64,000 nt of DNA from the IMG/VR virus record IMGVR_UViG_3300042558_003926, positions 186,001 to 250,000 of that record, one strand, 5' to 3'. Made by a program: the position numbers and the translations under genes. A model generated the notes under the pieces. That model did not search any database and had not been told where the DNA came from. It saw nothing but the letters and a program-made list of their open reading frames with translations. The first letter of the stretch is position 1; the number at the start of each line of letters is the position of its first letter. Positions 3,358 through 55,550 of this stretch are shown piece by piece.

Positions 3358-5283
3358 TTATTTTATTTTAGCTATCTTTTCTACTATAGATGTTCCGTTC
3401 TCCGTATTTAGAGTTACGAAATATAATCCCGATTGTAATTTACCAAGATCTGTATAGTATGAAAATTGTCCGTTTGGCACCTGACCTGTTAATATAGTAG
3501 CTACCTTTCTACCTTGCAAATCTGATATGTATAACGAAGCATTTGAAGTTTCAGATAGGTTGAATGTTATCATAACATCCTTTTCAAATGGGTTAGGATA
3601 AACTAACATGGAGTTCGAGTCTATCAATTGTCCGTTAGAAATTTTCAATACCTGAAGTATACCATTTGTTGGGGTCAATGTTAAATCTTTAGAATTAGAA
3701 GAGTTACCCGCAAATTTTCTGGTAGTATATAATGGGCTCTCGTCCCATTGATTCTGTGGTTGGAGTGCTACAAATTGTAGTGTTACAACCTCATCTCCGT
3801 TTTTAAGGGTATTCTGATTATTGGTAATATCATATCCTCCCCAATCTATTTCCCCGTTATTTGGATTAATATAAGTTAACCATTGCATTGCAGAAGATGA
3901 TGAATAAACTCCCTTAAATGAAAGTAGGTCCTCGTTATATTTTAATCCAAATTGAAGTGAACTTAATTCGATGCCATTAGTTAATACCTTAACTGGTACG
4001 TTTACTAAATTTCCCTCTTGTACTGATATGTGTGGTACGTTAACTTCTATAGTAGAAGTTGGGAAATCATATTCCACTTTAGTATCGATTACATTGTAGA
4101 TTTGATTCTCTAATCCTGGAGCAGGCCCAACTATTACTTCGATTGGTGTTACACGAGCCATATTATAGCCAGTTCCATTGGCATCTCCCGGTACAGACAC
4201 GTAATAAACTACTGAATCAGGTTGACCTGGTAAAATTTCAAATGTGAAGTTTGTTGTTCCTGCTATTGATGCAGTGTAGTTAGTTGAAGATCCGTTGATT
4301 GTGTTATATTCTGATTGAGTAAAGAATTTAACGTCTTTAGTGTTATTTGGCCAAACGTTGAATCTGCCCGAGATTCTACCAAATACTCCCCAAGCGTCGG
4401 ATATTGTTACGTTGTTTGATCCATTAACATCTGCTGCATAGTAATCAAATCCTGTCATAGTACCGTTACCTAATACCCATTGGTTTATTAGCTGAGCATC
4501 CGCAGTTGAGATGATGTTACCGACTGTCATTGAATCACCTTGTACTGCTAATCTTACATCCCAATAGGTTGTATCCAGAGGAACAGATATAGCAAAGTCA
4601 CCATTTATGTCAGTAACGTATGTTGAGTGTTGTGTCCAAGTGTTACCTCCAAACGGTCTTCTCTGTAAAGCTAATGTTAAGTTCTTAGCTGGTGTTCCAG
4701 TTACGTTGGTGAATGTTCCATGGTAAGCAAAGTTTACTGGAGTAAATACACCGCCGTAATTGTGTACACTTAGTGTGGTATCCATACCGTCTTGTTTAGC
4801 AGCATACGGGGTAAAGGTCTGAGCTCCCGACCATGTCAAGTTGGATATGGAAACTAAGTTATTAAATGTAGCTGCTGGTGCATGAGTAAATGTTATTAAG
4901 AATCTCTCACCGTTTGGTATCGTATAAGTAGCACTTGAACCAGTGTAAACTAGAGTTATAGTAATGTATCCGTTTGCTGTGTTTGTTATGTACTGTAGAT
5001 CCAAGTTTGTCGGAGATCCGATCAAAGACACAGTAGCATTTGTGAAAGCTACATTATCGTAAAATACTCTAAATTGAACACCCGCAAATTTTGTAAGCGT
5101 TGTGTTTTGTAGAGTGATCTTAGCGTTTGTAGTTCCTTGAGCTGATGTTCCAATCTGATATTGAGCATCAATAATACCCCATAATCCGTTGGATGGAGCT
5201 GCCGGAACAGCCTGTGCAAAAAGGTGGTCCGTTGTTAACGAAAGCAAGCTTAAAAGCAGTGCTAAAATAATTTTGTTTTTCAT
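3358..5283 (-). CDS. T9SS cargo protein: signal peptide, cohesin-like domain, Ig-like domain, dockerin-like segment, second cohesin, T9SS type A C-terminal sorting domain
   Basis: Cohesin-like motifs (FAGVQFRVFYD; VNVPVKV...LSSLQFGLKYNEDLLSF). Dockerin-like ISTADAQLI...AADVNGSNNVTISDA. C-terminal LVYPNPFEKDVMITF...LYISDLQGRKV...LQSGLYFVTL...VEKIAKIK. Confidence 0.85.
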   Translation of the reverse strand: MKNKIILALLLSLLSLTTDHLFAQAVPAAPSNGLWGIIDAQYQIGTSAQGTTNAKITLQNTTLTKFAGVQFRVFYDNVAFTNATVSLIGSPTNLDLQYITNTANGYITITLVYTGSSATYTIPNGERFLITFTHAPAATFNNLVSISNLTWSGAQTFTPYAAKQDGMDTTLSVHNYGGVFTPVNFAYHGTFTNVTGTPAKNLTLALQRRPFGGNTWTQHSTYVTDINGDFAISVPLDTTYWDVRLAVQGDSMTVGNIISTADAQLINQWVLGNGTMTGFDYYAADVNGSNNVTISDAWGVFGRISGRFNVWPNNTKDVKFFTQSEYNTINGSSTNYTASIAGTTNFTFEILPGQPDSVVYYVSVPGDANGTGYNMARVTPIEVIVGPAPGLENQIYNVIDTKVEYDFPTSTIEVNVPHISVQEGNLVNVPVKVLTNGIELSSLQFGLKYNEDLLSFKGVYSSSSAMQWLTYINPNNGEIDWGGYDITNNQNTLKNGDEVVTLQFVALQPQNQWDESPLYTTRKFAGNSSNSKDLTLTPTNGILQVLKISNGQLIDSNSMLVYPNPFEKDVMITFNLSETSNASLYISDLQGRKVATILTGQVPNGQFSYYTDLGKLQSGLYFVTLNTENGTSIVEKIAKIK

Positions 5284-6184: not shown

Positions 6185-6193
6185 CTATATATC
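6185..6193 (-). promoter_or_regulatory. Putative late promoter GATATATAG (endolysin/envelope operon)
   Basis: Recurrent motif 17 nt upstream of the ATG. Confidence 0.55.
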
Positions 6194-15411: not shown

Positions 15412-16015
15412 AGTAAATAATTTTGATCTCATAAGGCCTCTGATAGTTTTTCCTGACGATCAGAGTTTCTATTTTCTCCAGATACTAAAGAGAAGAAAGG
15501 ATAATCCTGATCTAGAAAAGGATATGATCCATATAGCGGACTTCTACATCTACAGCACAGAGGAGTATGATAAGCTAAAACATCGGATTATTAAAATATG
15601 CGACAACGAGAATGCTAGAGCATACCTTAGACTTAACGTACGGGACTCAAAGAAGATCGCTATGCAGACTTTGAAGAGAATAGTGGACTACATATCATCT
15701 GAGAATTATAAGGCCGTAAAGAAAGCGTATGCGTCCTGTACAGGTGAGTTCGGATCGTCATCCGACAAGACTTGGATAGTTGACATAGATAACGTCTCTA
15801 TGGATTCTTTTGGTCACGCAGAAAAATACGCTAAGATCCGTGACTTCGTTTCTGATTTGCAGAGAGAAGCTGGAAAGGAACCGATGGTAGGGATCATACC
15901 AACTAAAAGCGGATTTCATCTCATCACCAGACCATTTAATCTGCAGAAATTCAAATCAGAGTATCCCGATATAGACGTTCATAAAGATAATCCAACAACT
16001 TTATATTGTCCATGA
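15404..16015 (+). CDS. Conserved phage protein, possible AEP (primase-polymerase) fold
   Basis: FYFLQILKRRKDNP; WIVDID (motif I-like) and TKSGFHLIT (motif II-like). Confidence 0.45.
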   Translation: MSKVNNFDLIRPLIVFPDDQSFYFLQILKRRKDNPDLEKDMIHIADFYIYSTEEYDKLKHRIIKICDNENARAYLRLNVRDSKKIAMQTLKRIVDYISSENYKAVKKAYASCTGEFGSSSDKTWIVDIDNVSMDSFGHAEKYAKIRDFVSDLQREAGKEPMVGIIPTKSGFHLITRPFNLQKFKSEYPDIDVHKDNPTTLYCP

Positions 16016-17457
16016 AGGTAAAGGAAAAAGATAAAAGGATAGTAGATCTAAGTACACTGAATTCTGATCAGTTGAAAGCTTTTGAGACCCTTCGAGACTA
16101 TCTCTCTGATAAGGAGGATCAAAGTGTCTATGTTTTAAAAGGATGGGCAGGAACCGGTAAAACATACTGTATAAGCGTTCTCATCAGGTACGTGCTAGAG
16201 GTTATGTACTCCTCACATGCATGGTATAAGGTAGCAGTGACTGGACCTACCAATAAATCAGTTAGAGTTATCAAAAAAACTGCGGGAATAAAAAATAGCA
16301 GGGTATCATTTCAAACGGTACATAAGCTTCTAGGATTAAAAGAGAAGATTACTCAGGATGGACAACAGGTTTTCGAGAACGATGGATTTCTTAAACCTGG
16401 AATAAACTCCATAAAGCTTCTGGTCATAGATGAGGTTTCCATGCTAAACGATGATCTATTTCAGAAGATTATAAAATATCGGGGTAAATTAAAGATTATC
16501 TGTATGGGAGATCCAGCTCAGATCCCTCCTGTGGGAAGACCTGACTGCATACCTTTTAGAGATGAATTGGCTGATTTTTATAACATCAAGACCATACAGT
16601 TAAAAAAGGTCATGAGGCAAAAGGATGGAAATTCAATTATAGGCGTCTCGGTAAGGATTAGATCGGATCTTGGTTCAACCCAACAGGTAGCTCCGGAGAA
16701 TTTAATAAATGACAGGGGGGAAGGAGTAGAATTTCTAAACCTGAACAGCGATAATATTCGTAAGGAATTTTCCAAAATACTAGAGGGATATTTTAAAACT
16801 AAGGAGTTTGAAAGAGATTCTGAATATGCTAAGATTATAGCATGGAGAAATAAGACCGTATCATCGATGAACTCTCTTATTAGGAAAGTTATTTATGGAG
16901 ACGAGTCATTGAGTTCCAAGATATTAGTTGGGGAAAAACTTATAGCAAATACTCCAATAATAGAAGGGGAGTCGATCATCTTTAATACAAATGACGAATT
17001 TACCGTAGAGAAATTTGAGATTAAAAGTAAGGATCATAGATTTAAAATATCAGACGATCCAGACGAGGAACTTTTCGGTATAAGTTTGAAATACTACAGT
17101 ACAACGGTGTCTTATTTTAACGAGGACGATGAGCTGGAGAGAAAGGTAATTCAGATCCTCCACGAAGATAGTGAGAGCGATTTCAACAAACTAGCTAACA
17201 TACTGAAACTTAGAGCTATTAGAAAGTCTGGTAAGGATAAGACATGGATTCAGTATTATAACTTCCTCCGAAGATTTGCTGATGCGAGTTACGCATACGC
17301 AATAACATGTCACAAATCTCAGGGAAGCACATATAACACAGCATTTGTTCTAGAGGATGATATCAATATGAACTTCGATATTGTCGAAAGAAATAGAATA
17401 AAATACACAGCCTATACAAGGGCGAGCAAAAAAGTTTACGTACTAAAAAGATTTTAA
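16006..17457 (+). CDS. SF1B DNA helicase (Dda/RecD2-like)
   Basis: GWAGTGKT, TGPTNKS, VIDEVSM, MGDPAQIPPV, VMRQ, AITCHKSQGST, YTAYTRA. Confidence 0.92.
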   Translation: MSMKVKEKDKRIVDLSTLNSDQLKAFETLRDYLSDKEDQSVYVLKGWAGTGKTYCISVLIRYVLEVMYSSHAWYKVAVTGPTNKSVRVIKKTAGIKNSRVSFQTVHKLLGLKEKITQDGQQVFENDGFLKPGINSIKLLVIDEVSMLNDDLFQKIIKYRGKLKIICMGDPAQIPPVGRPDCIPFRDELADFYNIKTIQLKKVMRQKDGNSIIGVSVRIRSDLGSTQQVAPENLINDRGEGVEFLNLNSDNIRKEFSKILEGYFKTKEFERDSEYAKIIAWRNKTVSSMNSLIRKVIYGDESLSSKILVGEKLIANTPIIEGESIIFNTNDEFTVEKFEIKSKDHRFKISDDPDEELFGISLKYYSTTVSYFNEDDELERKVIQILHEDSESDFNKLANILKLRAIRKSGKDKTWIQYYNFLRRFADASYAYAITCHKSQGSTYNTAFVLEDDINMNFDIVERNRIKYTAYTRASKKVYVLKRF

Positions 17458-18514: not shown

Positions 18515-19588
18515 ATGAAATACGATCTCAAAATATTAAATGATTATATCGAAAGAGGGATGCTGGAAAGGAATCCACATCCTTATCTTTCTATAGACAT
18601 TTACAACTATACAAGAGATTGTCAGTTCACCCAAAGCTGGGACGATATAACTCTGAATATGAGAGGTACAGTACTAGATCTGGAGGGTAACGTCGTAGCA
18701 AGAACTTTTCCTAAGTTCTTTAATATGGAAGAACATACGCCAGATCAAATCCCTTCGGAGCCTTTTGACGTGTTCGAGAAAATGGACGGATCATTGGGAA
18801 TTCTTTTTCATTATGACAGCGATTGGCATTTGGCAACTCGAGGTTCGTTCGTCTCTGATCAGGCAGTAAAAGGAAAGGGGATACTCTCGAAATATAAATA
18901 CCAAGATCTAGATCCCGGATGCACCTATTTATTTGAGATCATATATTCGGAAAACAGAATAGTTGTTAGCTACGATTACGAGGACCTAGTTCTTCTTGCT
19001 ATAATAGACAACCAGACTGGATACGAGTATGATATACACAACGTTCTTTTTAGAGACTTTGAGGATGCTGGCTTTAAGATAGTTAAGAAATACAATGGAA
19101 TAGATGACTATAAGGAGCTTAAAAAGATAATCCCAGATAATTCAGAGGGATTTGTTATTAAGTTCGTCTCAGGCTTTAGAATGAAGATTAAAGGGGAAGA
19201 ATATGTTAGACTCCATAGACTTATTACTAATTTCTCCAATGTTGATATATGGGAGGTACTAAAAGAAGGCAAGAATTTAGAAGATTTTCTGGACAAAGTA
19301 CCCGATGAATTCGACTCTTGGGTAAAGAGGACAATGAATTCTATTTTAACAAATTACCAGAGAATAGAATCACAGGTTGGTAAAATCTATGAGTATCACA
19401 TGTTCGGTAAATTTGGCGACAAAGAGCCAGAGACTGACAAGAAAAAATACGCTGAGTGGGTAAAGGAACGGGATCCTAAAATTCAGCCCATATTATTTAA
19501 GATGTTTGACGGCGGAGACTATTCCAAATATCTATGGAGATTAGTTAGGCCAGAATACCAAAAACCATTTTGGAATAAAGAGGATTAA
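18515..19588 (+). CDS. RNA ligase, T4 Rnl1/RnlA-like
   Basis: RTFPKFFN, FEKMDGSLG (KxDG), LATRGSF, FEII, SEGFVIKF, MKIKGEEY. Confidence 0.88.
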   Translation: MKYDLKILNDYIERGMLERNPHPYLSIDIYNYTRDCQFTQSWDDITLNMRGTVLDLEGNVVARTFPKFFNMEEHTPDQIPSEPFDVFEKMDGSLGILFHYDSDWHLATRGSFVSDQAVKGKGILSKYKYQDLDPGCTYLFEIIYSENRIVVSYDYEDLVLLAIIDNQTGYEYDIHNVLFRDFEDAGFKIVKKYNGIDDYKELKKIIPDNSEGFVIKFVSGFRMKIKGEEYVRLHRLITNFSNVDIWEVLKEGKNLEDFLDKVPDEFDSWVKRTMNSILTNYQRIESQVGKIYEYHMFGKFGDKEPETDKKKYAEWVKERDPKIQPILFKMFDGGDYSKYLWRLVRPEYQKPFWNKED

Positions 19589-26047: not shown

Positions 26048-27190
26048 ATGGAAAGAAAATTAGCCTCCATACAGAGAGTAAAGGAAATCCTTCATATAGA
26101 AGGAGCTGATGCTATTGAGATAGCAGTAATTAATTCTTGGAAAGTAGTAACTAAGAAAGGAGAATATAGTCCTGGTGATCTTTGCATCTACTGTGAAATA
26201 GACTCTTTCCTCCCAGTAAGAGATGATCTTGAATTTCTAAGAAAATCATCCTACAAGAAAATGGGAGATCTAGAGGGATTCAGATTAAAAACAATCCGTC
26301 TCAGAGGACAGATTAGTCAAGGACTCATTTTGCCGCTACATGTCTTGGAAGATGATGGTGAAATGAAGATCGGAACTAGCAAACAGCCCTGGGGAGATCA
26401 GCTCCAATTGGGTCCATATGATAATGCCTTAGTGATAGAGGAAGGAACCGACGTAACTGGAATTCTTGGAGTGGTTAAATATGAGCCACCGATACCTGCA
26501 GAGTTATCGGGTAAGGTTAAAGGATTTTTTCCTGGATTTATCAGAAAGACTGATGAGGAGAGAATCCAAAATATGACCAAGGAGTTTGATAATATGAAAT
26601 CCCAGAAGTATTACGTCACAGAGAAACTTGACGGTTCTTCTGCAACATACTACTTCAGAGACGGTGTTTTTGGTGTCTGTTCAAGGAATCTAGAATTGGC
26701 AGATCCCGGGGAGTTCCAACCAGGAACGGTCTTATGTGAAGATGGAGTGGAAAGACCTAAGAAGGAGAATACTTTCTGGAAGATTGCTAGGGAATTTTTC
26801 ATCGCAGAAAAACTCGGAACCCAGAATCAAAACTACGCAATCCAGGGAGAATTGATAGGTGAGGGCATTCAAGGAAATCCATACAGAATTAAAGGACATA
26901 AGGTTATGATCTTCAACGTTTTCAACATAGACGAACAGGAGTACCTTGGTCTTGATGAGATGAGAGACTTTTTAGATAAAATCAACGTAGACGGAAACCC
27001 CCTTGAATTAGTTCCAATTATATCAGAAGACTATCAACTTCCTGAAACTATAGATGAGATTCTAAATCAGGCGGAAGGAAAGTCGATCTTAAATAATCAA
27101 ACGGAAAGAGAGGGTATAGTTATTAGAAACCGTAACAAGACAGTTTCTTTCAAAGCTATCTCTAATAATTTTCTACTTAAAGAAAAATAA
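26048..27190 (+). CDS. RNA ligase (ATP), DRB0094-like (Rnl2-related)
   Basis: RKLASIQRV...GADAIE, EIDSFLP, RGQISQGL, TEKLDGSS, QGELIG, REGIV, FKAISN. Confidence 0.9.
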   Translation: MERKLASIQRVKEILHIEGADAIEIAVINSWKVVTKKGEYSPGDLCIYCEIDSFLPVRDDLEFLRKSSYKKMGDLEGFRLKTIRLRGQISQGLILPLHVLEDDGEMKIGTSKQPWGDQLQLGPYDNALVIEEGTDVTGILGVVKYEPPIPAELSGKVKGFFPGFIRKTDEERIQNMTKEFDNMKSQKYYVTEKLDGSSATYYFRDGVFGVCSRNLELADPGEFQPGTVLCEDGVERPKKENTFWKIAREFFIAEKLGTQNQNYAIQGELIGEGIQGNPYRIKGHKVMIFNVFNIDEQEYLGLDEMRDFLDKINVDGNPLELVPIISEDYQLPETIDEILNQAEGKSILNNQTEREGIVIRNRNKTVSFKAISNNFLLKEK

Positions 27191-47899: not shown

Positions 47900-48361
47900 T
47901 TATCCTATGTAAGTTTTGATGAATTCATCAACACCCATTAATTCTGTGTGACCGTGATGGTCGATACAAAGCAATTTACCTTCAACTAGGTCAAATAAAC
48001 GAGCTTCTTCGTAAACTTGGAAAGAATCACTACCGTTGTTCTCATTACCAAGTCTACCATCTTTAGCTATGTAGTAAGCATAATCCTCTGTGTTAGTGCT
48101 ATTCGGCACCGCCTCAAATTCTCCATTCTCGTCATGAATTACATAACCCATTCCTGTTACATCGACATCGAAGATTTTTAATTCGTCTTCAGTTCCAGGA
48201 AATTCGGCAGCAAGTCTGTCAATAGCACTTTGCAATTTCTCTTTCTGAACTTCGTCGATGATTCCTACTGCTGCATAAGCATCTCCCTGAAAGCAAGTAG
48301 CATATCTTCTACCGGATCTTTGTGTGGGACCGAAGTTCTCAAATAATCTAAGGTGTTTCAT
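47900..48361 (-). CDS. Hypothetical protein with CTS-like tag
   Basis: MKHLRLFENF; GATATATAA at 48382-48390 on the minus strand. Confidence 0.65.
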   Translation of the reverse strand: MKHLRLFENFGPTQRSGRRYATCFQGDAYAAVGIIDEVQKEKLQSAIDRLAAEFPGTEDELKIFDVDVTGMGYVIHDENGEFEAVPNSTNTEDYAYYIAKDGRLGNENNGSDSFQVYEEARLFDLVEGKLLCIDHHGHTELMGVDEFIKTYIG

Positions 48362-48423: not shown

Positions 48424-49098
48424 TTATATCATACCCTTAAATCCATGGTAAGCCCTTATCAATTCCAGTCTCTTTATTTCTTCCGGCCCCACCCACTCGA
48501 ACTCTGGTTTGTAGAGTAGCATCTGATCCTCTAACGGGATCTCGCTCCAAAGTGACTCTACAGCCTCCTGATAGCTCATCTCATCTTCCATTTGGTAGAA
48601 TATACTCCTGAGTGTATCCTCAGAAACCGGATTATTTACACATTTGAACATCCCTCCGATTTTCTGAGGGGCACCTTCGAGAGAGGTGAGCTGGTTGTTG
48701 CTACAATTGAAATCGCTACCGATTTCCTGTGGTGCTCCCTCCAGTGAGGTAAGCTGGTTGTTGTTACAAAAGAAATCAAGGCCAACTCTCTTTGGTGATC
48801 CCACCAGCGAGGTGAGCTGATTGTCGTCACAATAGAAACCCTCAGCCTCCTGTGGTGCTCCCTCCAGTGAGGTGAGACGGTTGTCCTCGCATGAAAAATA
48901 TGCTCTCACTACACCAAATCTAACTCCTTTAAAATCTGTCAGATCCTGTCCAGTGCAGCTAAAGCTCCCATCCACATCAACAAGTCCGGTATGAGGATTA
49001 ATAGTCCATTTATCAGAGCACTCATCAAGCCACTCGATCTGCTCCGGGGTAAGCTCTACCGCACTCTCAAACATCTTATATGTCTTTAGATTCTTCAT
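48424..49098 (-). CDS. LRR-like repeat protein, paralog 6 of 6 (4 modules)
   Basis: MKNLKTYKMFES tag; xxNQLTSLEGAPQxVGxxFxC repeats; conserved C-terminus. Confidence 0.85.
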   Translation of the reverse strand: MKNLKTYKMFESAVELTPEQIEWLDECSDKWTINPHTGLVDVDGSFSCTGQDLTDFKGVRFGVVRAYFSCEDNRLTSLEGAPQEAEGFYCDDNQLTSLVGSPKRVGLDFFCNNNQLTSLEGAPQEIGSDFNCSNNQLTSLEGAPQKIGGMFKCVNNPVSEDTLRSIFYQMEDEMSYQEAVESLWSEIPLEDQMLLYKPEFEWVGPEEIKRLELIRAYHGFKGMI

Positions 49099-49100
49099 TC

Positions 49101-50156
49101 CTATATCATACCCTTAAATCCTTGGTAAGCCTTTAACGCTTCCAGCTTCCTTCCCTCCTCTGGACTCACCCACTCGAACTCTGGTCTGTACAGCAGAGCC
49201 TGATCCTCTATAGGGATCTCATTCCAGAGTGATTCCATAGCCTGGATGTAACTCTTCCCTTTCTCCATGGGGTATAATATTCTCCTGAGTGTCTCTTCAG
49301 AAACCGGATTGCTCTCGGAATAGAAAATCCCATTAATCTCCCGTGGTGCCCCATCCAGTGAGGTGAGCTGGTTGTTTTCGCAGAAGAAACCCCCTCTGAC
49401 CCGCTGTGGTGCTCCCTCCAGTGAGGTGAGCTGGTTGTTCCTGCAAATGAAATCCTCTCCAACCTCCTGTGGTGCTCCCTCTAGTGTGGTGAGCTGATTG
49501 TGGTCACAACTGAACCAAAATCCAACCTTCTGTGGTGCTCCCACCAGTGAGGTGAGCTGGTTGTTGCTACAATTGAAAGCCTGTCCAACACTCTGCGGTG
49601 CTCCCTCCAGAGAGGTGAGCTGGTTGTTGGTACACTTGAAACTCCCTCTGACCCGCTGTGGTGCTCCCACCAGTGATGTGAGCCGGTTGTTCTCACAATA
49701 GAAATACCCAGCAATCTCCTGTGGTGCTCCCACCAGTGATGTGAGCCGGTTGTTCTGGCAATAGAAATACCCACCAACATCCTGTGGTGCTCCCTCCAGT
49801 GAGGTGAGCTGGTTGTTGCTACAATTGAAATCCTGCCCAACACTCTGTGGTGCTCCCACCAGTGAGGTGAGCTGGTTGTCGTGGCAATAGAAATCCCCTC
49901 CAACATCCTGTGGTGCTCCCTCCAGTGAGGTGAGCTGATTGTTCCGGCAAATGAAATCCTCACTGACCACTCCAAACCTAACGTCTTTAAAATCTGTCAG
50001 ATCCTGTTCAGAGCAATCGAAATCCCCATCCACATCAACCAGTCCGGTTTGTGGATTAATAGTCCATTCATCAGTGCACTTGTCCAACCACTCGATCTGC
50101 TCTGGTGTAAGCTCTACCGCACTCTCAAACATCTTATATGTCTTTAGATTCTTCAT
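49101..50156 (-). CDS. LRR-like repeat protein, paralog 5 of 6 (10 modules)
   Basis: Same architecture. Confidence 0.85.
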   Translation of the reverse strand: MKNLKTYKMFESAVELTPEQIEWLDKCTDEWTINPQTGLVDVDGDFDCSEQDLTDFKDVRFGVVSEDFICRNNQLTSLEGAPQDVGGDFYCHDNQLTSLVGAPQSVGQDFNCSNNQLTSLEGAPQDVGGYFYCQNNRLTSLVGAPQEIAGYFYCENNRLTSLVGAPQRVRGSFKCTNNQLTSLEGAPQSVGQAFNCSNNQLTSLVGAPQKVGFWFSCDHNQLTTLEGAPQEVGEDFICRNNQLTSLEGAPQRVRGGFFCENNQLTSLDGAPREINGIFYSESNPVSEETLRRILYPMEKGKSYIQAMESLWNEIPIEDQALLYRPEFEWVSPEEGRKLEALKAYQGFKGMI

Positions 50157-50157
50157 T

Positions 50158-50844
50158 TTATATCATACCTTTAAATCCTTGGTAAGCTCTTAACGCTTCC
50201 AGCTTCCTTCTCTCCTCTGGACTCACCCACTCGAACTCTGGTCTGTACAACAGAGTCTGATCTTCTAACGGAATCTTGCTCCAGAGTGATTCCACAGCCT
50301 GCATGTGACTCTCCCCTTTCTTCATGAGGGAGAATATTCTCTTGAGTGTTTCATTAGAAACTGGGTTGCCGTAGCAATAGAAAATCAATCTCACCCGCTG
50401 TGGTGCTCCCACTAGAGAAGTGAGCTGGTTGTTGTCACATCTAAAATCCCCTTCAACCTCCCGTGGTGCACCCTCCAGTGAGGTGAGCTGATTGTTGTTA
50501 CAATAGAAATCCCATCCAACCTTCTGTGGTGCTCCCTCCAGTGTGGTGAGCTGGTTGTCACTACAACTGAAACCCCCACCAACCCGCTGTGGTGCTCCCT
50601 CCAGTGTGGTGAGCTGGTTGCCGTAGCAATAGAAATACCCACTGACCACTCCAAACCTAACGTCTTTAAAATCTGGCAGATCCATACGAGAGCAGCCAAA
50701 ATCCCCATCCACATCAACCAGTCCGGTTTGTGGATTGAGTGTCCAGGTACCATCAATGCACTCGTCAAGCCACTCGATCTGCTCTGGTGTAAGTTCTCCT
50801 ACACTCTCAAACAGTTGGCGATATGTCTTTAGATTCTTCATCAT
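50158..50844 (-). CDS. LRR-like repeat protein, paralog 4 of 6 (4 modules)
   Basis: Same architecture; start at 50844 or 50841. Confidence 0.85.
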   Translation of the reverse strand: MMKNLKTYRQLFESVGELTPEQIEWLDECIDGTWTLNPQTGLVDVDGDFGCSRMDLPDFKDVRFGVVSGYFYCYGNQLTTLEGAPQRVGGGFSCSDNQLTTLEGAPQKVGWDFYCNNNQLTSLEGAPREVEGDFRCDNNQLTSLVGAPQRVRLIFYCYGNPVSNETLKRIFSLMKKGESHMQAVESLWSKIPLEDQTLLYRPEFEWVSPEERRKLEALRAYQGFKGMI

Positions 50845-50848
50845 AATA

Positions 50849-51661
50849 CTATATCATACCTTTAAATCCTTGGTAAGCTCTTAACGCTTCCAGTTTTCTT
50901 ACCTCCTCTGGACTCACCCACTCGAACTCTGGTCTGTACAACAGAGCCTGATCCTCTACTGGAATCTCGTTCCAGAGTGTCTCCACAGCCTGAATGTAAC
51001 TCTCCCCTTTCTTCATGAGGGAGAATATGCTCTTAAGAGTCTCCACAGAAACTGGGTTGTTCTCACAATAGAAATAATCCCGTCCGATCTCCAGTGTTGC
51101 TCCCTCCAATGAGGTGAGCTGGTTGTCCCCACAATAGAAATACCCATCCACCTTCTGTGGTGCTCCCTCCAGTGTGGTGAGCTGATTGTTCTCACAATTG
51201 AACCTCCCTCCAACCCGCTGTGGTGCTCCCTTCAGTGAGGTGATCTGGTTGCCGTTACACTCGAAATACCCTCCAACCTTCTGTGGTGCTCCCTCCAGTG
51301 TGGTGAGCTGATTGTTGTTACAAAAGAAACCACTTCTGACCCGCTGTGGTGCTCCCACCAGTGAGGTGAGCTGGTTGTTGCTACAACTGAAATGCTCTCC
51401 AACCTCCTGTGGCGATCCCTCCAATGAGGTGAGCTGGTTGTTCCTACAATTGAAACTCCCACTCACCACTCCAAACTTAACGCCTTTAAAATCTGTCAGG
51501 TCCTGTCTAAAGCAATCGAAGTCTCCTTTCACATCAACCAGTCCTGTTCGTGGATTGATCTTCCAGGTACCATCAGTGAACTTGTCCAGCCACTCGATCT
51601 GCTCTGGTGTGAGCTCTTGTGTGTTCTCAAACATTTGGCGATATGTCTTTAGATTCTTCAT
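50849..51661 (-). CDS. LRR-like repeat protein, paralog 3 of 6 (6 modules)
   Basis: Same architecture. Confidence 0.85.
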   Translation of the reverse strand: MKNLKTYRQMFENTQELTPEQIEWLDKFTDGTWKINPRTGLVDVKGDFDCFRQDLTDFKGVKFGVVSGSFNCRNNQLTSLEGSPQEVGEHFSCSNNQLTSLVGAPQRVRSGFFCNNNQLTTLEGAPQKVGGYFECNGNQITSLKGAPQRVGGRFNCENNQLTTLEGAPQKVDGYFYCGDNQLTSLEGATLEIGRDYFYCENNPVSVETLKSIFSLMKKGESYIQAVETLWNEIPVEDQALLYRPEFEWVSPEEVRKLEALRAYQGFKGMI

Positions 51662-52408
51662 TTATATCATACCTTTAAATCCTTGGTAAGCCTGGAGAGC
51701 TTCCAGCTTTCTTCTCTCCTCTGGACTCACCCACTCGAACTCTGGTCTGTACAGCAGAGCCTGATCCCCTAATGGAATCTCACCCCAGAGAGACTCCACA
51801 GCCTGAAGATAGCTCTCACCCTTCGTCATGGTGGAGAAGATGCTCTTGAGTGTCCCTTTGGAAACTGGGTTGCCCTCACAATTGAAATGCCGTCCGATCT
51901 CCCGTGGTGCTCCCTCCAGTGAGGTGAGCTGGTTGTTACTACAATAGAAATACCTCCCAACCTTCTGTGGTGCTCCCTCCAGTGTGGTGAGCTGATTTCC
52001 CTCACAAATGAAATCACCCTCAACCTTCTGTGGTGCCCCCACCAGTGAGGTGAGCTGGTTGTTGTCACACCTGAAACGCTCTCCTACCTCCTGTGGTGCC
52101 CCCACCAGTGAGGTGAGCTGGTTGTTGTTACAATAGAAACCCTCACCAACCTTCTGTGGTGCTCCCTCCAGTGAGGTGAGCTGGTTGTAGTCACAACCGA
52201 AATCCTTACTCACCACTCCAAACCTAATCCCTTTGAAATCCGTCAGATCATGTTCAGAGCAATCGAAGTCTCCTTTCACATCAACCAGTCCTGTTCGTGG
52301 ATTGATCTTCCAGGTACCATCAATGCACTCGTCAAGCCACTCGATCTGCTCTGGTGTGAGCTCTCCCACACTCTCAAACAGTTGGCTATATGTCTTTAGA
52401 TTCTTCAT
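51662..52408 (-). CDS. LRR-like repeat protein, paralog 2 of 6 (5 modules)
   Basis: Same architecture. Confidence 0.85.
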   Translation of the reverse strand: MKNLKTYSQLFESVGELTPEQIEWLDECIDGTWKINPRTGLVDVKGDFDCSEHDLTDFKGIRFGVVSKDFGCDYNQLTSLEGAPQKVGEGFYCNNNQLTSLVGAPQEVGERFRCDNNQLTSLVGAPQKVEGDFICEGNQLTTLEGAPQKVGRYFYCSNNQLTSLEGAPREIGRHFNCEGNPVSKGTLKSIFSTMTKGESYLQAVESLWGEIPLGDQALLYRPEFEWVSPEERRKLEALQAYQGFKGMI

Positions 52409-53281
52409 TTATATCATGCCTTTAAATCCAGCGTAAGCCTTAATGACATCCAGCTTCTTACCAAACTCTGGACTCACCCACTCGAACTCTGGTCTGTATA
52501 ACAGAGCCTGATCATCTAATGGAATCTCGTTCCAGAGTGTCTCCACAGCCTGCAGGTAGCTATTCCCTTCCTTCGTGAGGGAGAATATGCTCTTGAGTGT
52601 CTCTTCAGAAACGGGGTTTTTCTCACAATAGAAACCCCCTCCAACCTTTTGTGGTGCTCCCTCCAGAGAGGTAAGTTGGTTTCTATCGCAATTGAAACTT
52701 CCACCGACCTCCTGTGGTGCTCCCTCCAGTGAGGTGAGGTTGTTGCCCTCACAAAGGAAACGCTCTCCTACCTCCTGTGGTGCCCCCTCCAGCGAGGTGA
52801 GCTGGTTGTTGTTACAACTGAAACCTCTTCCGACCCGCTGTGGTGCTCCCTCCAGTGAGGTGAGCTGGTTGTCGCTGCAATAGAAATCATGTCCAACCCG
52901 CTGAGGTGCTCCCTCTAGGGAGATGAGCTGGTTGTCCTCACAATTGAAATTCGCTCCGACTTCCTGAGGTGCTCCCACCAGCGAGGTGAGCTGGTTGTAC
53001 CTACAATAGAAATCCTCTCCAACCTTCTGTGGTGCTCCCTCTAGGGAGATGAGCTGGTTGTTGCTGCAATAGAAATACCCACTGACCACTCCAAACCTAA
53101 TCCCTTTGAAATCTGTCAGGTCCTGTTCAGAGCAATTGAAATCCCCATCCACATCAACAAGTCCGGTTTGTGGATTGATCTTCCAGGTACCATCAGTGCA
53201 CTTGTCCAACCACTCGATCTGCTCTGGTGTAAGCTCTCCCACACTCTCAAACAGTTGGCGATACGTCTTCAGATTTTTCAT
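52409..53281 (-). CDS. LRR-like repeat protein, paralog 1 of 6 (7 modules)
   Basis: Same architecture. Confidence 0.85.
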   Translation of the reverse strand: MKNLKTYRQLFESVGELTPEQIEWLDKCTDGTWKINPQTGLVDVDGDFNCSEQDLTDFKGIRFGVVSGYFYCSNNQLISLEGAPQKVGEDFYCRYNQLTSLVGAPQEVGANFNCEDNQLISLEGAPQRVGHDFYCSDNQLTSLEGAPQRVGRGFSCNNNQLTSLEGAPQEVGERFLCEGNNLTSLEGAPQEVGGSFNCDRNQLTSLEGAPQKVGGGFYCEKNPVSEETLKSIFSLTKEGNSYLQAVETLWNEIPLDDQALLYRPEFEWVSPEFGKKLDVIKAYAGFKGMI

Positions 53282-53285
53282 CCCA

Positions 53286-53294
53286 CTATATATC
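53286..53294 (-). promoter_or_regulatory. Putative late promoter GATATATAG driving the LRR array
   Basis: 4 nt upstream of the first paralog. Confidence 0.6.
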
Positions 53295-53420
53295 TCTCAA
53301 TATAAGGCATCATCCCGGTCTAAAAAAAAATGTGTTGGGGGCTTTTGGGACCAAATCCCCAGGAGGGGCCCGCCCACCAAATAGATGTAGTATATGTTCC
53401 GTCTCCTATAGATAGAGGTA

Positions 53421-53843
53421 GTGATAGATAGAGTACAGTCACACACACTAAAGAGCATGAGCACACAATCGCATATAGACAAGGTAAACATGAAACCTAA
53501 TCTACTACCTTATCCACACCATGTAGCAGCACCTAAGATAGAGACAGTAGATCTATCAGCGTTCAATACACTACAGGCACACAAGGTGAGCAAGTCACTA
53601 CAGAAGAGAGCAGAGGAGATAGCTAGTGCTGTGAAATCCCTACAAGAAGACTATGCACTCAACCTACAGCTATACTCTGCAACCAGATCATTCGAGCCTG
53701 TACTAGGAGAGGTGTATCATCTATATGAGAAGGCAGATGGCACCCAGTTCCTAAGTCTCATATCTCCCAGAGAATGGAAGCAGAAGTACCTGTATTCTGG
53801 TGTGCTAAACTCCGATGGTACCTGGACCCGAGTAGATCTGTAG
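53421..53843 (+). CDS. DUF2452-like protein
   Basis: LPYPHHVAAPKI...FEPVLGEVYHLYE...FLSLISPREW; start uncertain (53421, 53457 or 53490). Confidence 0.7.
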   Translation: MIDRVQSHTLKSMSTQSHIDKVNMKPNLLPYPHHVAAPKIETVDLSAFNTLQAHKVSKSLQKRAEEIASAVKSLQEDYALNLQLYSATRSFEPVLGEVYHLYEKADGTQFLSLISPREWKQKYLYSGVLNSDGTWTRVDL

Positions 53844-54048
53844 GAGATCCCAGAACTGATCCCAAACTAACCCCCAACAACATAGTATGTTAGTAAGATA
53901 GTATGCACAGCCATGTTCATCTGAGTGGGAAGCACGTGGAGGCACTCATATAGGTACTCGTATGCGAAAACTTGGCCCTCCCGGCAGCCCCTCTCCAGGG
54001 CCGAGCAACCACCCAGGGTGCGAACAAGGGTGTTCTCGGATAGCCCCG

Positions 54049-54170
54049 TTAGCCCGGGTTAACCACCCCCGCTTAGCCCGGGTTAACCCAGCCTCCCACT
54101 AACCCGGGGTAATTCCTGGTAAGCAATGGTAAAAACTGGAATTTTAGCCCGGGTTAACTAGGTTAACTCG
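54049..54170. repeat. Near-palindromic iterons TTAGCCCGGGTTAAC (3 exact copies plus variants) in a GC-rich non-coding segment
   Basis: Exact copies start at 54049, 54073 and 54144; variant TAACCCGGGGTAA at about 54100; extra GGTTAAC at about 54161. Confidence 0.85.
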
Positions 54171-54395
54171 GCCCGCCCCGAATCCCTAGGATTTCTCGCC
54201 CCGATTCCAGCCTCAGACACCGCGGTTATCTCTTAGGTATCTCGCCTCGCCTCACTCTACCTCTCTCTATAGGATCAGGAGACGGAATCTACTCATGTCT
54301 ACTCTATCTATAGGGAGAAGGATAAGGATAATACATAACTATTTGGGGCGGGTTTCCCACGGTGTTACCCCTCAGAAAACCCCCCGAAGAATTTG

Positions 54396-54404
54396 GATAT
54401 ATAG
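54396..54404 (+). promoter_or_regulatory. Putative late promoter GATATATAG
   Basis: 6 nt upstream of a tagged gene. Confidence 0.55.
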
Positions 54405-54410
54405 ATCACT

Positions 54411-55205
54411 ATGAAACATGTTAAAATATTTGAAGAGTATATCCCAGGAGGCAGAGCCTCTGGCAAGAGCCTAAAGGATCTCGCCAAGATCCACGGTGTA
54501 GGAATCAAGAGCCTGGAGAAGCAGCTGAAGGTTGGCGTAGCCGTTGAGATGGAACACACCAACAGTGAGGCCAAGGCCGAGGAGATAGCTATGGATCACC
54601 TAGCAGAAAACCCACGGTATTACACTCGGCTTATCCGGAAGGGATTCGTGGATGAACCAAAGGCTCTGAAGATCTATAAGGAACTCTATGAGGGAGACTG
54701 GTTTGATAATCTAAGTTACCACCCGGCAAACCAACCAGATGGACCTGATCCAACAAGGGAGATCGAATACACCCCGGCCCAACAGAAGTTTACCACTATG
54801 TCATTCCTAGGTGATAGCAGCATTGGCTTTACTCTGCTGCATGGCAAGGACTCCGTGGGAGGTGGAGCTTGGGTGCTTAACATCGATGAGGTTCCGGATG
54901 ACTATCAGCTGATCACTGTCTATGGAGATGATGAAGAGAATGAGACGGAGATTGATGAGGACACTTGCATCAACTACGCTACTGATCTCTGGGATGCTAG
55001 AGATAGAGATGTTGAGAATGTAGGAGAAGGCATGGAAGGCTGGGAAGATGGTAAGTTGCTATGTAAGCTAGATGCTGAACTGGCAGAGGATTTGATTGGC
55101 ACTATGGAGTTCGTGATGAGAAGAGGTAATTACGGTCCTGGTTCTAATATCAAGAAAAAAGTCTCTGGTGCTGTCTATGAGCTAAGCAAACTATTTGAGC
55201 TGTGA
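54411..55205 (+). CDS. DUF5661-like domain protein with CTS-like tag and acidic C-terminal domain
   Basis: MKHVKIFEEY; KQLKVGVAVEMEHT...AEEIAMDHLAENPRYYTRL; family name recalled from memory. Confidence 0.7.
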   Translation: MKHVKIFEEYIPGGRASGKSLKDLAKIHGVGIKSLEKQLKVGVAVEMEHTNSEAKAEEIAMDHLAENPRYYTRLIRKGFVDEPKALKIYKELYEGDWFDNLSYHPANQPDGPDPTREIEYTPAQQKFTTMSFLGDSSIGFTLLHGKDSVGGGAWVLNIDEVPDDYQLITVYGDDEENETEIDEDTCINYATDLWDARDRDVENVGEGMEGWEDGKLLCKLDAELAEDLIGTMEFVMRRGNYGPGSNIKKKVSGAVYELSKLFEL

Positions 55206-55258
55206 AAGATAGTATCTTCGTAACATACTCTGTGGTCGGGCGCAAAACCTGGCCATTA

Positions 55259-55290
55259 TTTTTTTACCCCGAGTCTAAACGTTATATTTG
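55259..55290 (+). promoter_or_regulatory. Putative early promoter (CCCCG-N11-TATATTTG)
   Basis: Motif copy preceding a 31-aa membrane ORF (ATG at 55297). Confidence 0.7.
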
Positions 55291-55550
55291 AAAGTATGAA
55301 GAATCCAAAAGATAAAAGCGATCTAGTGATAGCACTGATAATAGCTGGATGGTTCTTGGCAATAGGTGTTGTAGCTTATCTCTTTACTTAAGAGCCATCC
55401 CGGCTCTTGCCAATAGATCATGCTATCCCAAAGAATTATAAGACTGGGGCTAAAGGTTAGACCCCTTACCACACCTCACCCACGGTGTTACCCTCTTCAA
55501 CCGCTAAACACAACACCGAACTTCATAAATAGAATTCCGATATATAAAGC

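What the first reader, a model, noticed from the sequence alone, without database searches (positions are those of the whole stretch)
53850..54395. GC-rich non-coding island with palindromic iterons: candidate replication origin or genome terminus/packaging site
Seen in sequence: about 550 bp lack a credible ORF and are much richer in GC than the rest of the window. They contain three exact TTAGCCCGGGTTAAC copies (one mismatch from the perfect palindrome TTAACCCGGGTTAA; the first two are 24 bp apart) plus variants. The island lies near the switch from a long minus-strand late block to an 8-kb run of small plus-strand genes dense in early-type promoters. Inference: these are binding sites for a dimeric initiator or terminase, and the early cluster could be the first DNA to enter the cell.
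Basis: partly seen in the sequence, partly recalled or inferred. Interest (0 to 1): 0.62.

Follow-up and report, generated by a model that had tools for sequence, protein, structure and literature searches.

The report
Conserved noncoding control element, jumbo phage
The GC-rich gap with palindromic repeats is real and belongs to a conserved, single-copy 0.5-kb noncoding element that always sits just upstream of one acidic-protein gene in a family of freshwater jumbo phages; it looks more like a protein-binding control region than the genome's replication origin or packaging end, but its function is unproven.

Summary
Window 53844-54410 is a 567-bp gene-free gap with 52% GC, against 37% for the genome. 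It has three exact TTAGCCCGGGTTAAC copies and one degenerate copy. The motif occurs nowhere else in the 289,651-bp phage record.

It is not an isolated GC island. The GC-rich stretch runs from 48.4 to 55.2 kb and consists mostly of six leucine-rich-repeat paralogs.

The gap is one member of a conserved noncoding family, with 26 distinct variants in metagenomes. Each variant lies directly upstream of the same acidic protein, here called X. Relatives that lack X also lack the element.

The element is modular. Its parts are a multi-copy TASTA-triplet motif, a conserved core, a variable middle that holds the palindromes, TGG repeats every 10 nt, CGCCCCG repeats, and a reusable promoter/leader module ending in GATATATAG just before the ATG.

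The four-site palindrome array (consensus TTARCCCGGGYTAA, spacing 24/25-26/45) is conserved only in the window's own clade of 11 variants.

I found no Rfam match, no conserved RNA fold, no GC-skew inflection and no adjacent replication or terminase gene. Read-based terminus analysis could not be run.

Best reading, at about 0.4: a DNA-level operator/regulatory array for gene X. The origin and RNA readings remain open.

The parts
53331..53440 (-). Inverted second copy of the ~110-nt promoter/leader module (CTCTATCTATAGGAGACGGAA ... CTATTTGG ... GC-rich hairpin ... GATATATAG). It points leftward to the first LRR gene, whose ATG is at 53281.
   Evidence: The nhmmer profile of the element, positions 398-508, matches G000 239331-239440 on the minus strand at E 8.7e-13. 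Inverted repeats I1/I4/I6 are, and the GATATATAG context is.
53457..53843 (+). DUF2452 gene, the upstream neighbour of the element in this phage.
   Evidence: Pfam PF10504 at E 1.2e-12. There are 194 homologs. In some relatives a Pterin_4a gene lies between this gene and the element.
53844..54410 (+). The whole conserved noncoding element. It is single copy in the genome.
   Evidence: nhmmer finds one full-length match in G000, at 239876-240405. Alignments A2 and A3 hold 8 and 26 variants. Its identity to relatives is 0.56-0.94, against 0.24-0.75 at fourfold sites of the adjacent gene X.
53879..53905 (+). Motif M1: three TA(G/C)TA pentamers 8 nt apart (ACATAGTATGTTAGTAAGATAGTATG). It is a multi-copy intergenic motif.
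   Evidence: It is nearly invariant in all 26 variants, and the G/C centres flip independently. Further copies lie at window 55207 and at genome positions 253371, 258819 and 265341. About 8 copies occur in the 430-kb phage G002.
53906..53960 (+). Clade-specific insertion of about 55 nt.
   Evidence: It is present only in the window's superclade and is gapped in the other clades.
53961..54048 (+). Conserved core block 1. It contains the inverted repeat GGCCCT (53974-53979) / AGGGCC (53997-54002) and the palindrome CCACCCAGGGTG (54009-54020).
   Evidence: It is 75% identical to L018 over 88 nt and is conserved in A2. There is partial G-C/C-G swapping at two pairs of the inverted repeat. A recognisable counterpart exists in the distant phage G002. 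Part of this block was fixed by the search pattern used, so its invariance in A3 is partly by construction.
54049..54063 (+). Palindromic repeat, site 1 (TTAGCCCGGGTTAAC).
54073..54087 (+). Palindromic repeat, site 2, 24 bp from site 1.
   Evidence: In relatives it reads TTAGCCCGGGCTAA or TTAACCCCGGCTAA.
54099..54112 (+). Degenerate site 3 (CTAACCCGGGGTAA), 26 bp from site 2.
   Evidence: It is a canonical TTAGCCCGGGTTAA in L109, L114 and L118.
54117..54143 (+). AT-richer block with TGG at 54117, 54127 and 54137, an exact 10-nt period. Other clades have four units.
   Evidence: The sequence is, the alignments, and the 10-nt length steps between clades.
54144..54167 (+). Palindromic repeat, site 4 (54144-54158), plus an extra GGTTAAC half-site (54161-54167).
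54170..54256 (+). Conserved core block 2, with C-rich repeats: CGCCCCG at 54174-54180 and 54197-54203, and CGCCTCGCCTC at 54243-54253.
   Evidence: Direct-repeat family D2. Conserved in A2 and A3. CGCCCCGATTTACC is also present in G002.
54257..54410 (+). Promoter/leader module of gene X. Its upstream part is duplicated in tandem (CTCTCTCTATAGG at 54261, CTCTATCTATAGGGAGA at 54302). It continues with CTATTTGG, a covarying hairpin, and GATATATAG at 54396-54404, 6 nt before the ATG.
   Evidence: Hairpin covariation is (pairs 641:679 AU12/GC11 and 645:675 GC12/CG12). The number of 12-nt units varies between clades.
54411..55205 (+). Gene X: a DUF5661 N-terminal domain plus a conserved acidic core. 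The element always precedes this gene.
   Evidence: Pfam PF18905. Alignment A4. Core pI is about 4.1-4.4 (4.67 in the outlier L117) with net charge -20 to -27 in 23 of 24 variants (-9 in L117). The AF2 model has pLDDT 82 and no fold match.
55207..55256 (+). A second M1 copy directly after the X stop codon, followed by a terminator hairpin with a T-run (55232-55256) and then a TTATATTTG promoter.

Best explanation
The region is a conserved, modular cis-acting element that most likely works as double-stranded DNA. I read it as a protein-binding control region for the gene immediately downstream (X, an acidic protein of unknown function) and the run of small genes after it.

On this reading the four TTARCCCGGGYTAA palindromes are operator-like sites for a dimeric sequence-specific DNA-binding protein peculiar to the window's clade. 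Three sites sit 24-26 bp apart, as in a lambda-type tripartite operator. The fourth lies across a block of TGG repeats spaced one helical turn apart, which could bend or loop the DNA.

The conserved flanks (the M1 TASTA triplet, the GC-rich core, the CGCCCCG repeats) would bind factors common to the whole phage family. The 3' 110 nt is a reusable promoter/leader that also drives the LRR gene on the other strand.

What is shown: the repeats are real and unique in the genome; the element is single copy, under purifying selection, and linked to X; it is modular; no conserved RNA fold was found.

What is inferred: that proteins bind it, which proteins, and that the outcome is transcriptional control rather than replication.
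For: - The repeats are far beyond chance and unique in the genome.
- The consensus is symmetric, and site number and spacing (24/25-26/45) are fixed in all 11 clade variants while the spacers change.
- The element is found in 26 distinct variants and always lies directly upstream of X. Even a 430-kb distant phage has X with a diverged element in front of it.
- The element and X are absent together in close relatives and in complete 317-321-kb relatives.
- It is more conserved than neutral sites of X: 0.56-0.59 identity where fourfold sites are saturated at 0.24-0.37.
- There is no conserved RNA structure. The RNAalifold consensus is only -13 kcal/mol. Covarying helices number the same as in a reversed control, 6 against 6. 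Folding z-scores are near zero outside the palindrome clade. There is no Rfam hit.
- The palindromes have no loop, and length differences between clades come in 10-nt and 12-nt repeat units.
- The 3' module recurs upstream of other genes, and GATATATAG sits just upstream of the next ATG at many of its 23 genomic sites, often right after a terminator hairpin.
Against: - About 500 nt of conserved sequence is very large for the control region of one accessory gene.
- The element is GC-rich and C-rich on the coding strand (C 0.35, G 0.23 in the core) in a 37% GC genome. That is more typical of RNA genes; the same genome's tmRNA is also a GC-rich gap.
- No candidate regulator gene lies nearby. The next small ORFs look like membrane proteins.
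- DUF5661 is not a demonstrated DNA-binding domain. It also occurs on X variants without these palindromes and on unrelated phage proteins.
- No recognisable sigma-70 or Bacteroidota TAnnTTTG promoter overlaps the sites.
- There are no expression or binding data.
Confidence: 0.4

Rival explanations
1. Lytic replication origin. Clade-specific iterons and family-wide GC-rich repeats bind an initiator on either side of an AT-richer, helically phased block that serves as the unwinding element. Flanking promoters supply activating or priming transcription, as in T7 or T4 origins.
For: - The element is single copy, conserved and noncoding.
- It has repeats of several kinds, including a 10-nt phased AT-richer centre flanked by GC-rich blocks. 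In G002 that centre is strongly AT-rich.
- Promoter-like modules lie on both sides.
- TRF finds no better iteron cluster elsewhere in the genome.
- Replication modules are known to be exchanged as cassettes; this is general knowledge, not tested here.
Against: - Cumulative GC skew shows no inflection.
- The element is linked to an acidic protein with no DNA-binding signature, not to a helicase, primase or initiator. The nearest helicase is about 37 kb away.
- The element is absent, together with X, from close relatives and from complete 317-321-kb relatives.
- The palindromic sites are not conserved across clades.
- No convincing DnaA boxes were seen on reading the sequence.
Confidence: 0.2
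2. An RNA-level element. Either a long, largely unstructured, C-rich intercistronic leader or processed noncoding RNA read through from the DUF2452 gene, or an antisense G-rich RNA. It would act through linear sequence motifs, for example protein sponging, processing, antitermination, or translation control of X.
For: - The element is GC-rich within an AT-rich genome, like the phage's own tmRNA gap.
- No terminator is predicted between the DUF2452 stop codon and X, so read-through is plausible.
- At its other sites, M1 sits right after stop codons and just before terminator hairpins, which suggests a transcript-level signal.
- Two local hairpins show some compensatory changes.
- The tight pairing with X would suit an RNA-protein module.
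Against: - No Rfam family matches.
- The consensus fold collapses as sequences are added: -43.8 kcal/mol with 8 sequences, -13.5 with 26.
- Covarying helices are no more frequent than in a reversed control.
- There is no consistent excess folding energy on either strand.
- The palindromes have no loops.
- No expression data could be obtained.
Confidence: 0.2
3. Packaging recognition site (pac or cos-like), or the physical genome end that enters the cell first. The palindromes would be small-terminase binding sites arranged around a bend, as in lambda cosB.
For: Multiple sites flank a phased, bendable block. The site is single copy and conserved within the clade. It lies at the head of a run of small plus-strand genes.
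Against: - No terminase gene is adjacent.
- The element is missing from relatives that must still package DNA.
- In G002, a record with terminal repeats, the homologous element lies about 153 kb from the record's end.
- The contig ends of G000 fall in a coding tandem repeat, so they say nothing about the termini.
Confidence: 0.05
4. No dedicated function of its own. On this reading it is a recombination scar or shuffling junction of a mobile 'element + X' cassette, bounded by repeated promoter modules.
For: Inverted promoter modules flank the DUF2452 + element unit. The cassette shows a presence/absence pattern. Divergence is mosaic: DUF2452 is far more conserved than X.
Against: Purifying selection acts across about 400 nt of non-module sequence. 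Blocks are invariant in 26 variants and recognisable in a 430-kb distant phage. Palindrome spacing is conserved.
Confidence: 0.05

Closest known systems
Lambda-type tripartite operators (OR/OL)
   Same: Three near-palindromic sites of about 14-17 bp at about 24-bp centre spacing, with a symmetric consensus suited to a dimer, placed upstream of an early-type gene run. The lambda spacing is from my own knowledge.
   Different: There is no repressor or Cro gene next to it. The sites lie about 250-360 bp from the nearest promoter-like motif rather than overlapping one. A fourth site lies across a phased block. The sites are embedded in about 500 nt of further conserved sequence.
Iteron-type origins (lambda ori, T4 oriE, iteron plasmids)
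   Same: Clustered repeats next to an AT-richer block, single copy, noncoding.
   Different: The repeats here are palindromes, not same-orientation direct iterons. No initiator gene is adjacent or overlapping. There is no skew signal. The element is dispensable in relatives.
T7 left-end control region upstream of gene 0.3 (ocr)
   Same: Several hundred bp of noncoding control DNA in front of a small, very acidic early protein. The comparison is from my own knowledge. Part of the module even reads CTATAGGGAGA, like the T7 promoter core.
   Different: No T7-like RNA polymerase gene was found (the search's controls were silent, so this is weak). No host-type promoters were recognised in the element. 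A position at a genome end is not shown. X has no detectable similarity to Ocr or ArdA.
T4-type PeSL cassettes (promoter-early stem-loop units between small genes)
   Same: The M1-terminator hairpin-promoter units between small genes (window 55207-55295 and three further genomic sites) are repeated intergenic regulatory cassettes of that general kind.
   Different: The sequences are different and the promoter is Bacteroidota-type TAnnTTTG. This comparison applies to M1 and its surroundings, not to the 0.4-kb core of the finding.

Membership tests
Iteron-type replication origin | Three or more same-orientation direct repeats (about 17-22 bp) that bind an initiator | tested here: not met
   The repeats are 14-bp palindromes, so they have no orientation. 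Other repeats (CGCCCCG, TGG-N7) are 7-10 nt long.
Iteron-type replication origin | Adjacent AT-rich unwinding element | tested here: inconclusive
   A block of about 30 nt that is AT-richer (54113-54143) lies between sites 3 and 4. It is strongly AT-rich only in G002.
Iteron-type replication origin | Lies within or next to the initiator or other replication genes | tested here: not met
   The neighbours are DUF2452, LRR paralogs and the acidic protein X. The nearest helicase is at window 16006-17457.
Iteron-type replication origin | Strand-composition (GC skew) inflection at the site | tested here: not met
   Cumulative skew rises from 0.2 to 27.4 with only small local dips that follow gene direction.
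Iteron-type replication origin | Supports initiation in vivo | not testable with these tools
   This needs marker-frequency or plasmid-ori assays.
pac/cos packaging site or physical terminus | Pile-up of read starts or a coverage step at the site | not tested
pac/cos packaging site or physical terminus | Location in or beside the small-terminase gene | tested here: not met
   No terminase-like family was found among the neighbours scanned.
Repressor operator array (lambda OR-like) | Two or more palindromic sites with a symmetric consensus and fixed spacing | tested here: met
   Four sites with consensus TTARCCCGGGYTAA, spaced 24/25-26/45, in 11 of 11 clade variants.
Repressor operator array (lambda OR-like) | Sites overlap the promoter(s) they control | tested here: not met
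   The nearest promoter-like motifs are 54261-54318 and 54396-54404. No sigma-70 or TAnnTTTG site lies in 54040-54170.
Repressor operator array (lambda OR-like) | A cognate DNA-binding regulator is encoded nearby | tested here: inconclusive
   No HTH or RHH family was detected. The downstream small ORFs look like membrane proteins. The DUF5661 domain of X is of unknown function and does not track the sites.
Structured noncoding RNA (any Rfam family or a new one) | Match to a curated covariance model | tested here: not met
   There are 0 hits at gathering score in the window. Around the site there are only chance-level hits.
Structured noncoding RNA (any Rfam family or a new one) | Conserved secondary structure with covariation | tested here: not met
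   RNAalifold gives -13.5 kcal/mol and 29 pairs for 703 columns. There are 6 covarying helices against 6 in the reversed control. Only two short local hairpins show swaps.
Structured noncoding RNA (any Rfam family or a new one) | Excess folding stability over shuffles, specific to one strand | tested here: not met
   The window gives z -1.7 on the + strand and -0.5 on the - strand. Across variants, z is near 0 except in the palindrome clade.
T7-like single-subunit RNA polymerase promoter | Phage encodes a T7-like RNA polymerase | tested here: inconclusive
   PF00940 was not found in G000, but the search's control genomes were also silent.

The most novel reading that the evidence does not exclude
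The 0.5-kb GC-rich element and the acidic protein X form an autonomous two-part cassette of Bacteroidota jumbo phages. In it the noncoding part would be either a lineage-specific origin of replication or an unstructured C-rich RNA or DNA partner of X. The variable middle, which holds the palindromes in this clade, would set specificity. That would be a noncoding-element/protein module of a kind not yet described.
Probability: 0.2. Interest if true: 0.65.

Novelty: new variant of a known kind. Interest (0 to 1): 0.42.

Why it matters
Cis-acting DNA and RNA elements of jumbo phages are almost unmapped, and those of uncultured Bacteroidota phages even less so. This work defines a noncoding family with 26 or more variants, clear boundaries and a modular anatomy. 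It has one obligatory protein partner and a clade-specific palindrome array. Together these give concrete probes for finding the binding protein and for testing origin, operator and RNA functions.

The work also yields two candidate promoter or regulatory motifs for this phage group: GATATATAG and the TASTA triplet. If the element proved to be an origin, it would be one of the first mapped in this type of phage. If it is only a control region, the interest is moderate.

Tried and rejected
- **Rfam.** A scan of the window at gathering score and of the site at E-value threshold gave nothing credible.
- **Hidden small gene.** The ATG of the 46-aa ORF is not conserved, and indels are not in multiples of three.
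- **Large structured RNA.** Rejected.
- **T7-like promoter reading of CTATAGGGAGA.** No T7-like polymerase was found, and only 2-3 such sites exist per genome.
- **DnaA boxes and sigma-54 promoter.** I read for these by eye and found no convincing match.
- **Restriction-site avoidance or decoy idea.** CCCGGG and GTTAAC occur at the expected genome-wide frequency, and the element's palindrome density is only at the 95th percentile.
- **DUF5661 domain of X as the binder of the palindromes.** It co-occurs with them in the window clade. But L099, L111 and L119 carry DUF5661 without these sites, and the domain is attached to unrelated proteins in cultured phages.
- **Function of X by fold.** Foldseek against PDB and VIA wide gave only generic helical-hairpin matches. 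The Atlas returned only DUF5661.
- **Exact 15-mer in IMG/VR.** There were 13 single-copy hits in unrelated contexts, taken as chance.
- **GenBank phages.** No DNA match.
- **Literature.** Searches for DUF5661 and for jumbo-phage origins gave nothing usable.

Full report
**Context.** The window is bases 186001-250000 of a 289,651-bp IMG/VR virus record that CheckV rates 100% complete. GC is 37.1%. A protein with a type-IX-secretion sorting domain (window 3358-5283) and TAnnTTTG promoter-like boxes point to a Bacteroidota host. The record begins inside a coding Gly/Ser tandem repeat, so its ends are assembly breaks, not physical termini.

**Observation.** The three exact TTAGCCCGGGTTAAC copies lie at 54049, 54073 and 54144, with a degenerate copy at 54099. 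With up to 3 mismatches there are 8 matches against 0.95 expected, and 0 of 100 shuffles reach that number. The 15-mer occurs nowhere else in the genome.

The gene-free gap is 53844-54410, 567 bp. It lies between a DUF2452 gene (53457-53843) and a gene I call X (54411-55205, with a DUF5661 N-terminal domain). GC is 0.52 for the gap and 0.58 for its core, with C at 0.35 and G at 0.23 on the + strand.

The 'island' is really 48.4-55.2 kb. Most of it is six paralogous leucine-rich-repeat genes on the minus strand, at 0.49 GC. The strand switch is at 53282-53456, upstream of DUF2452. Nothing identifies the minus-strand block as late genes. Sigma-70-like promoters are not enriched downstream.

**Relatives.**
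- DUF2452 homologs led to syntenic loci.
- A gap of about 560 bp homologous to the finding is present in several lineages (alignment A2).
- A metagenome scan with a conserved 33-nt pattern returned 34 loci. Together with the earlier loci these give 26 distinct variants (alignment A3). Part of core block 1 is invariant by construction of that pattern.
- A profile search shows exactly one full-length copy in the genome.
- In every locus the element is followed directly by a homolog of X. The upstream neighbour varies between DUF2452 and Pterin_4a.
- Close relatives with 80-81% DUF2452 identity that lack the gap also lack X.
- Two complete 317-321-kb relatives lack X. A 430-kb phage has X, with a recognisably diverged element in front of it.
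- The element is more conserved than neutral sites of X: 0.89-0.94 against 0.48-0.75 in close pairs, and 0.56-0.59 against 0.24-0.37 in distant pairs.

**Anatomy, 5' to 3'.**
1. M1 consists of three TA(G/C)TA pentamers 8 nt apart. It is nearly invariant, and the centres flip independently. It recurs at other intergenic sites, right after stop codons and before terminator-promoter units, and about 8 times in the 430-kb phage.
2. A clade-specific insertion of 55 nt follows.
3. Core block 1 holds the GGCCCT/AGGGCC inverted repeat and the CCACCCAGGGTG palindrome.
4. The variable middle holds the four palindromes in the window's superclade (11 variants). The consensus is TTARCCCGGGYTAA and the spacing is fixed at 24/25-26/45. 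Other clades have unrelated sequence at this position. L099, for example, has two GGCCGGGGTTCCA copies 22 nt apart.
5. TGG repeats follow at an exact 10-nt period, three units here and four elsewhere.
6. Core block 2 holds the CGCCCCG and CGCCTCGCCTC repeats.
7. The last part is a promoter/leader module of about 110-150 nt. It has 12-nt units in variable number, the motif CTATCTATAGGAGACGGAA, CTATTTGG, a hairpin with compensatory changes, and GATATATAG 6 nt before the ATG.

An inverted copy of this module lies at 53331-53440 and faces the LRR genes. It also occurs 2-3 times in relatives. GATATATAG occurs 23 times in the genome. At many of these sites it sits just upstream of the next ATG, often right after a terminator hairpin, so I take it as a phage promoter-type signal.

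**RNA or DNA?**
- There is no Rfam match.
- The consensus fold shrinks from -43.8 to -13.5 kcal/mol as sequences are added.
- Covarying helices are no more frequent than in a reversed control.
- Folding z-scores are significant only where the loop-less palindromes are present.

These results argue against a structured RNA. They cannot exclude an unstructured, sequence-specific RNA. GC-richness, the C-rich strand bias and the lack of a terminator after DUF2452 keep that option open. The same genome's other GC-rich gap at 146.6-147.1 kb is a tmRNA gene.

**Origin or terminus?**
- GC skew shows no inflection.
- No replication or terminase gene is adjacent.
- The element is tied to X, whose core is strongly acidic (pI about 4.1-4.4, or 4.67 in the outlier L117; net charge -20 to -27 in 23 of 24 variants, -9 in L117). 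X has no DNA-binding or other recognisable fold.
- The element and X are dispensable as a pair in relatives.
- At least two other GC-rich, repeat-bearing upstream regions precede GATATATAG genes elsewhere in the genome, at 268.8-269.4 kb and 272.9-273.2 kb. This weakens any claim that the site is uniquely origin-like.
- Read-based terminus analysis could not be run.

**Verdict.** I favour a DNA-level protein-binding control region for X and the downstream small genes, with the palindromes acting as clade-specific operator-type sites (confidence about 0.4). Origin (0.2) and RNA (0.2) are serious rivals. The pac/terminus and 'junction scar' readings are minor at 0.05 each.

The element family is, as far as these searches show, undescribed. 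It has no Rfam family, no GenBank phage match and no literature hit.

Noticed in passing
G000 146574-147065 (outside the window; locus L125 575-1066): The phage encodes a tmRNA (Rfam RF00023, 85.5 bits; ARAGORN tag peptide EEVELAVAA*). It lies in another GC-richer noncoding gap and is followed by a terminator and a GATATATAG motif.
   Followed up: yes
window 48424-53281 (minus strand): Six tandem paralogous genes of 224-351 aa. They share N- and C-terminal ends and carry 3-10 copies of a 21-aa leucine-rich repeat (NNQLTSLEGAPQxVGxxFxC; 63-nt DNA period). They account for most of the GC-rich island. Another paralog lies near genome position 273.2 kb.
   Followed up: partly
genome-wide; in the window at 6185(-), 32280(-), 36518, 36977, 53286(-), 54396, 63189(-): GATATATAG occurs 23 times in the genome. 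At many sites it sits just upstream of the next ATG, often directly after a terminator hairpin. This is probably a phage-specific promoter-type motif, analogous in placement to the T4 late TATAAATA.
   Followed up: partly
window 55207-55300; genome 253371, 258819, 265341: Repeated intergenic cassettes: the M1 TASTA-triplet motif right after a stop codon, followed by a GC-rich segment; at 55207 this is a terminator hairpin with T-run, then a TTATATTTG promoter-like box just before the next ATG, and two of the other three sites show a similar box. They resemble T4-type PeSL shuffling cassettes.
   Followed up: partly
G000 268830-269435 and 272930-273200 (locus L126): Two further GC-rich noncoding upstream regions with their own repeats (AGGGGTCCC-type motifs; a 23-nt tandem repeat CACTTTGCATATTTAGAC...). 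Each precedes a GATATATAG motif and a gene. Neither has an Rfam match.
   Followed up: partly
window 3358-5283 (minus strand): A 641-aa protein with a cohesin domain and a type-IX-secretion C-terminal sorting domain (Por_Secre_tail). This suggests a Bacteroidota host.
   Followed up: no
window 54411 and many other gene starts (e.g. 47900-48361, 48424-53281, 55827): Many genes of this phage and its relatives begin with a stereotyped N-terminus, MK(H/N)(L/I/V)K.(F/Y).., whatever follows.
   Followed up: no
G000 1-670: The record starts inside a long coding tandem repeat (27/81-nt periods, Gly/Ser-rich). This is a likely assembly break.
   Followed up: partly
L056 3482-3503: An exact 22-nt match to motif M1 lies inside what looks like a structural-gene region of an unrelated 9.5-kb viral contig. 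It is unexplained.
   Followed up: no
window 18515-19588 and 26048-27190: Two RNA-ligase genes, one T4 Rnl1-like and one with a PHA02142 OB-fold plus an RNA_ligase domain. A Dda/PIF1-like helicase is at 16006-17457.
   Followed up: no
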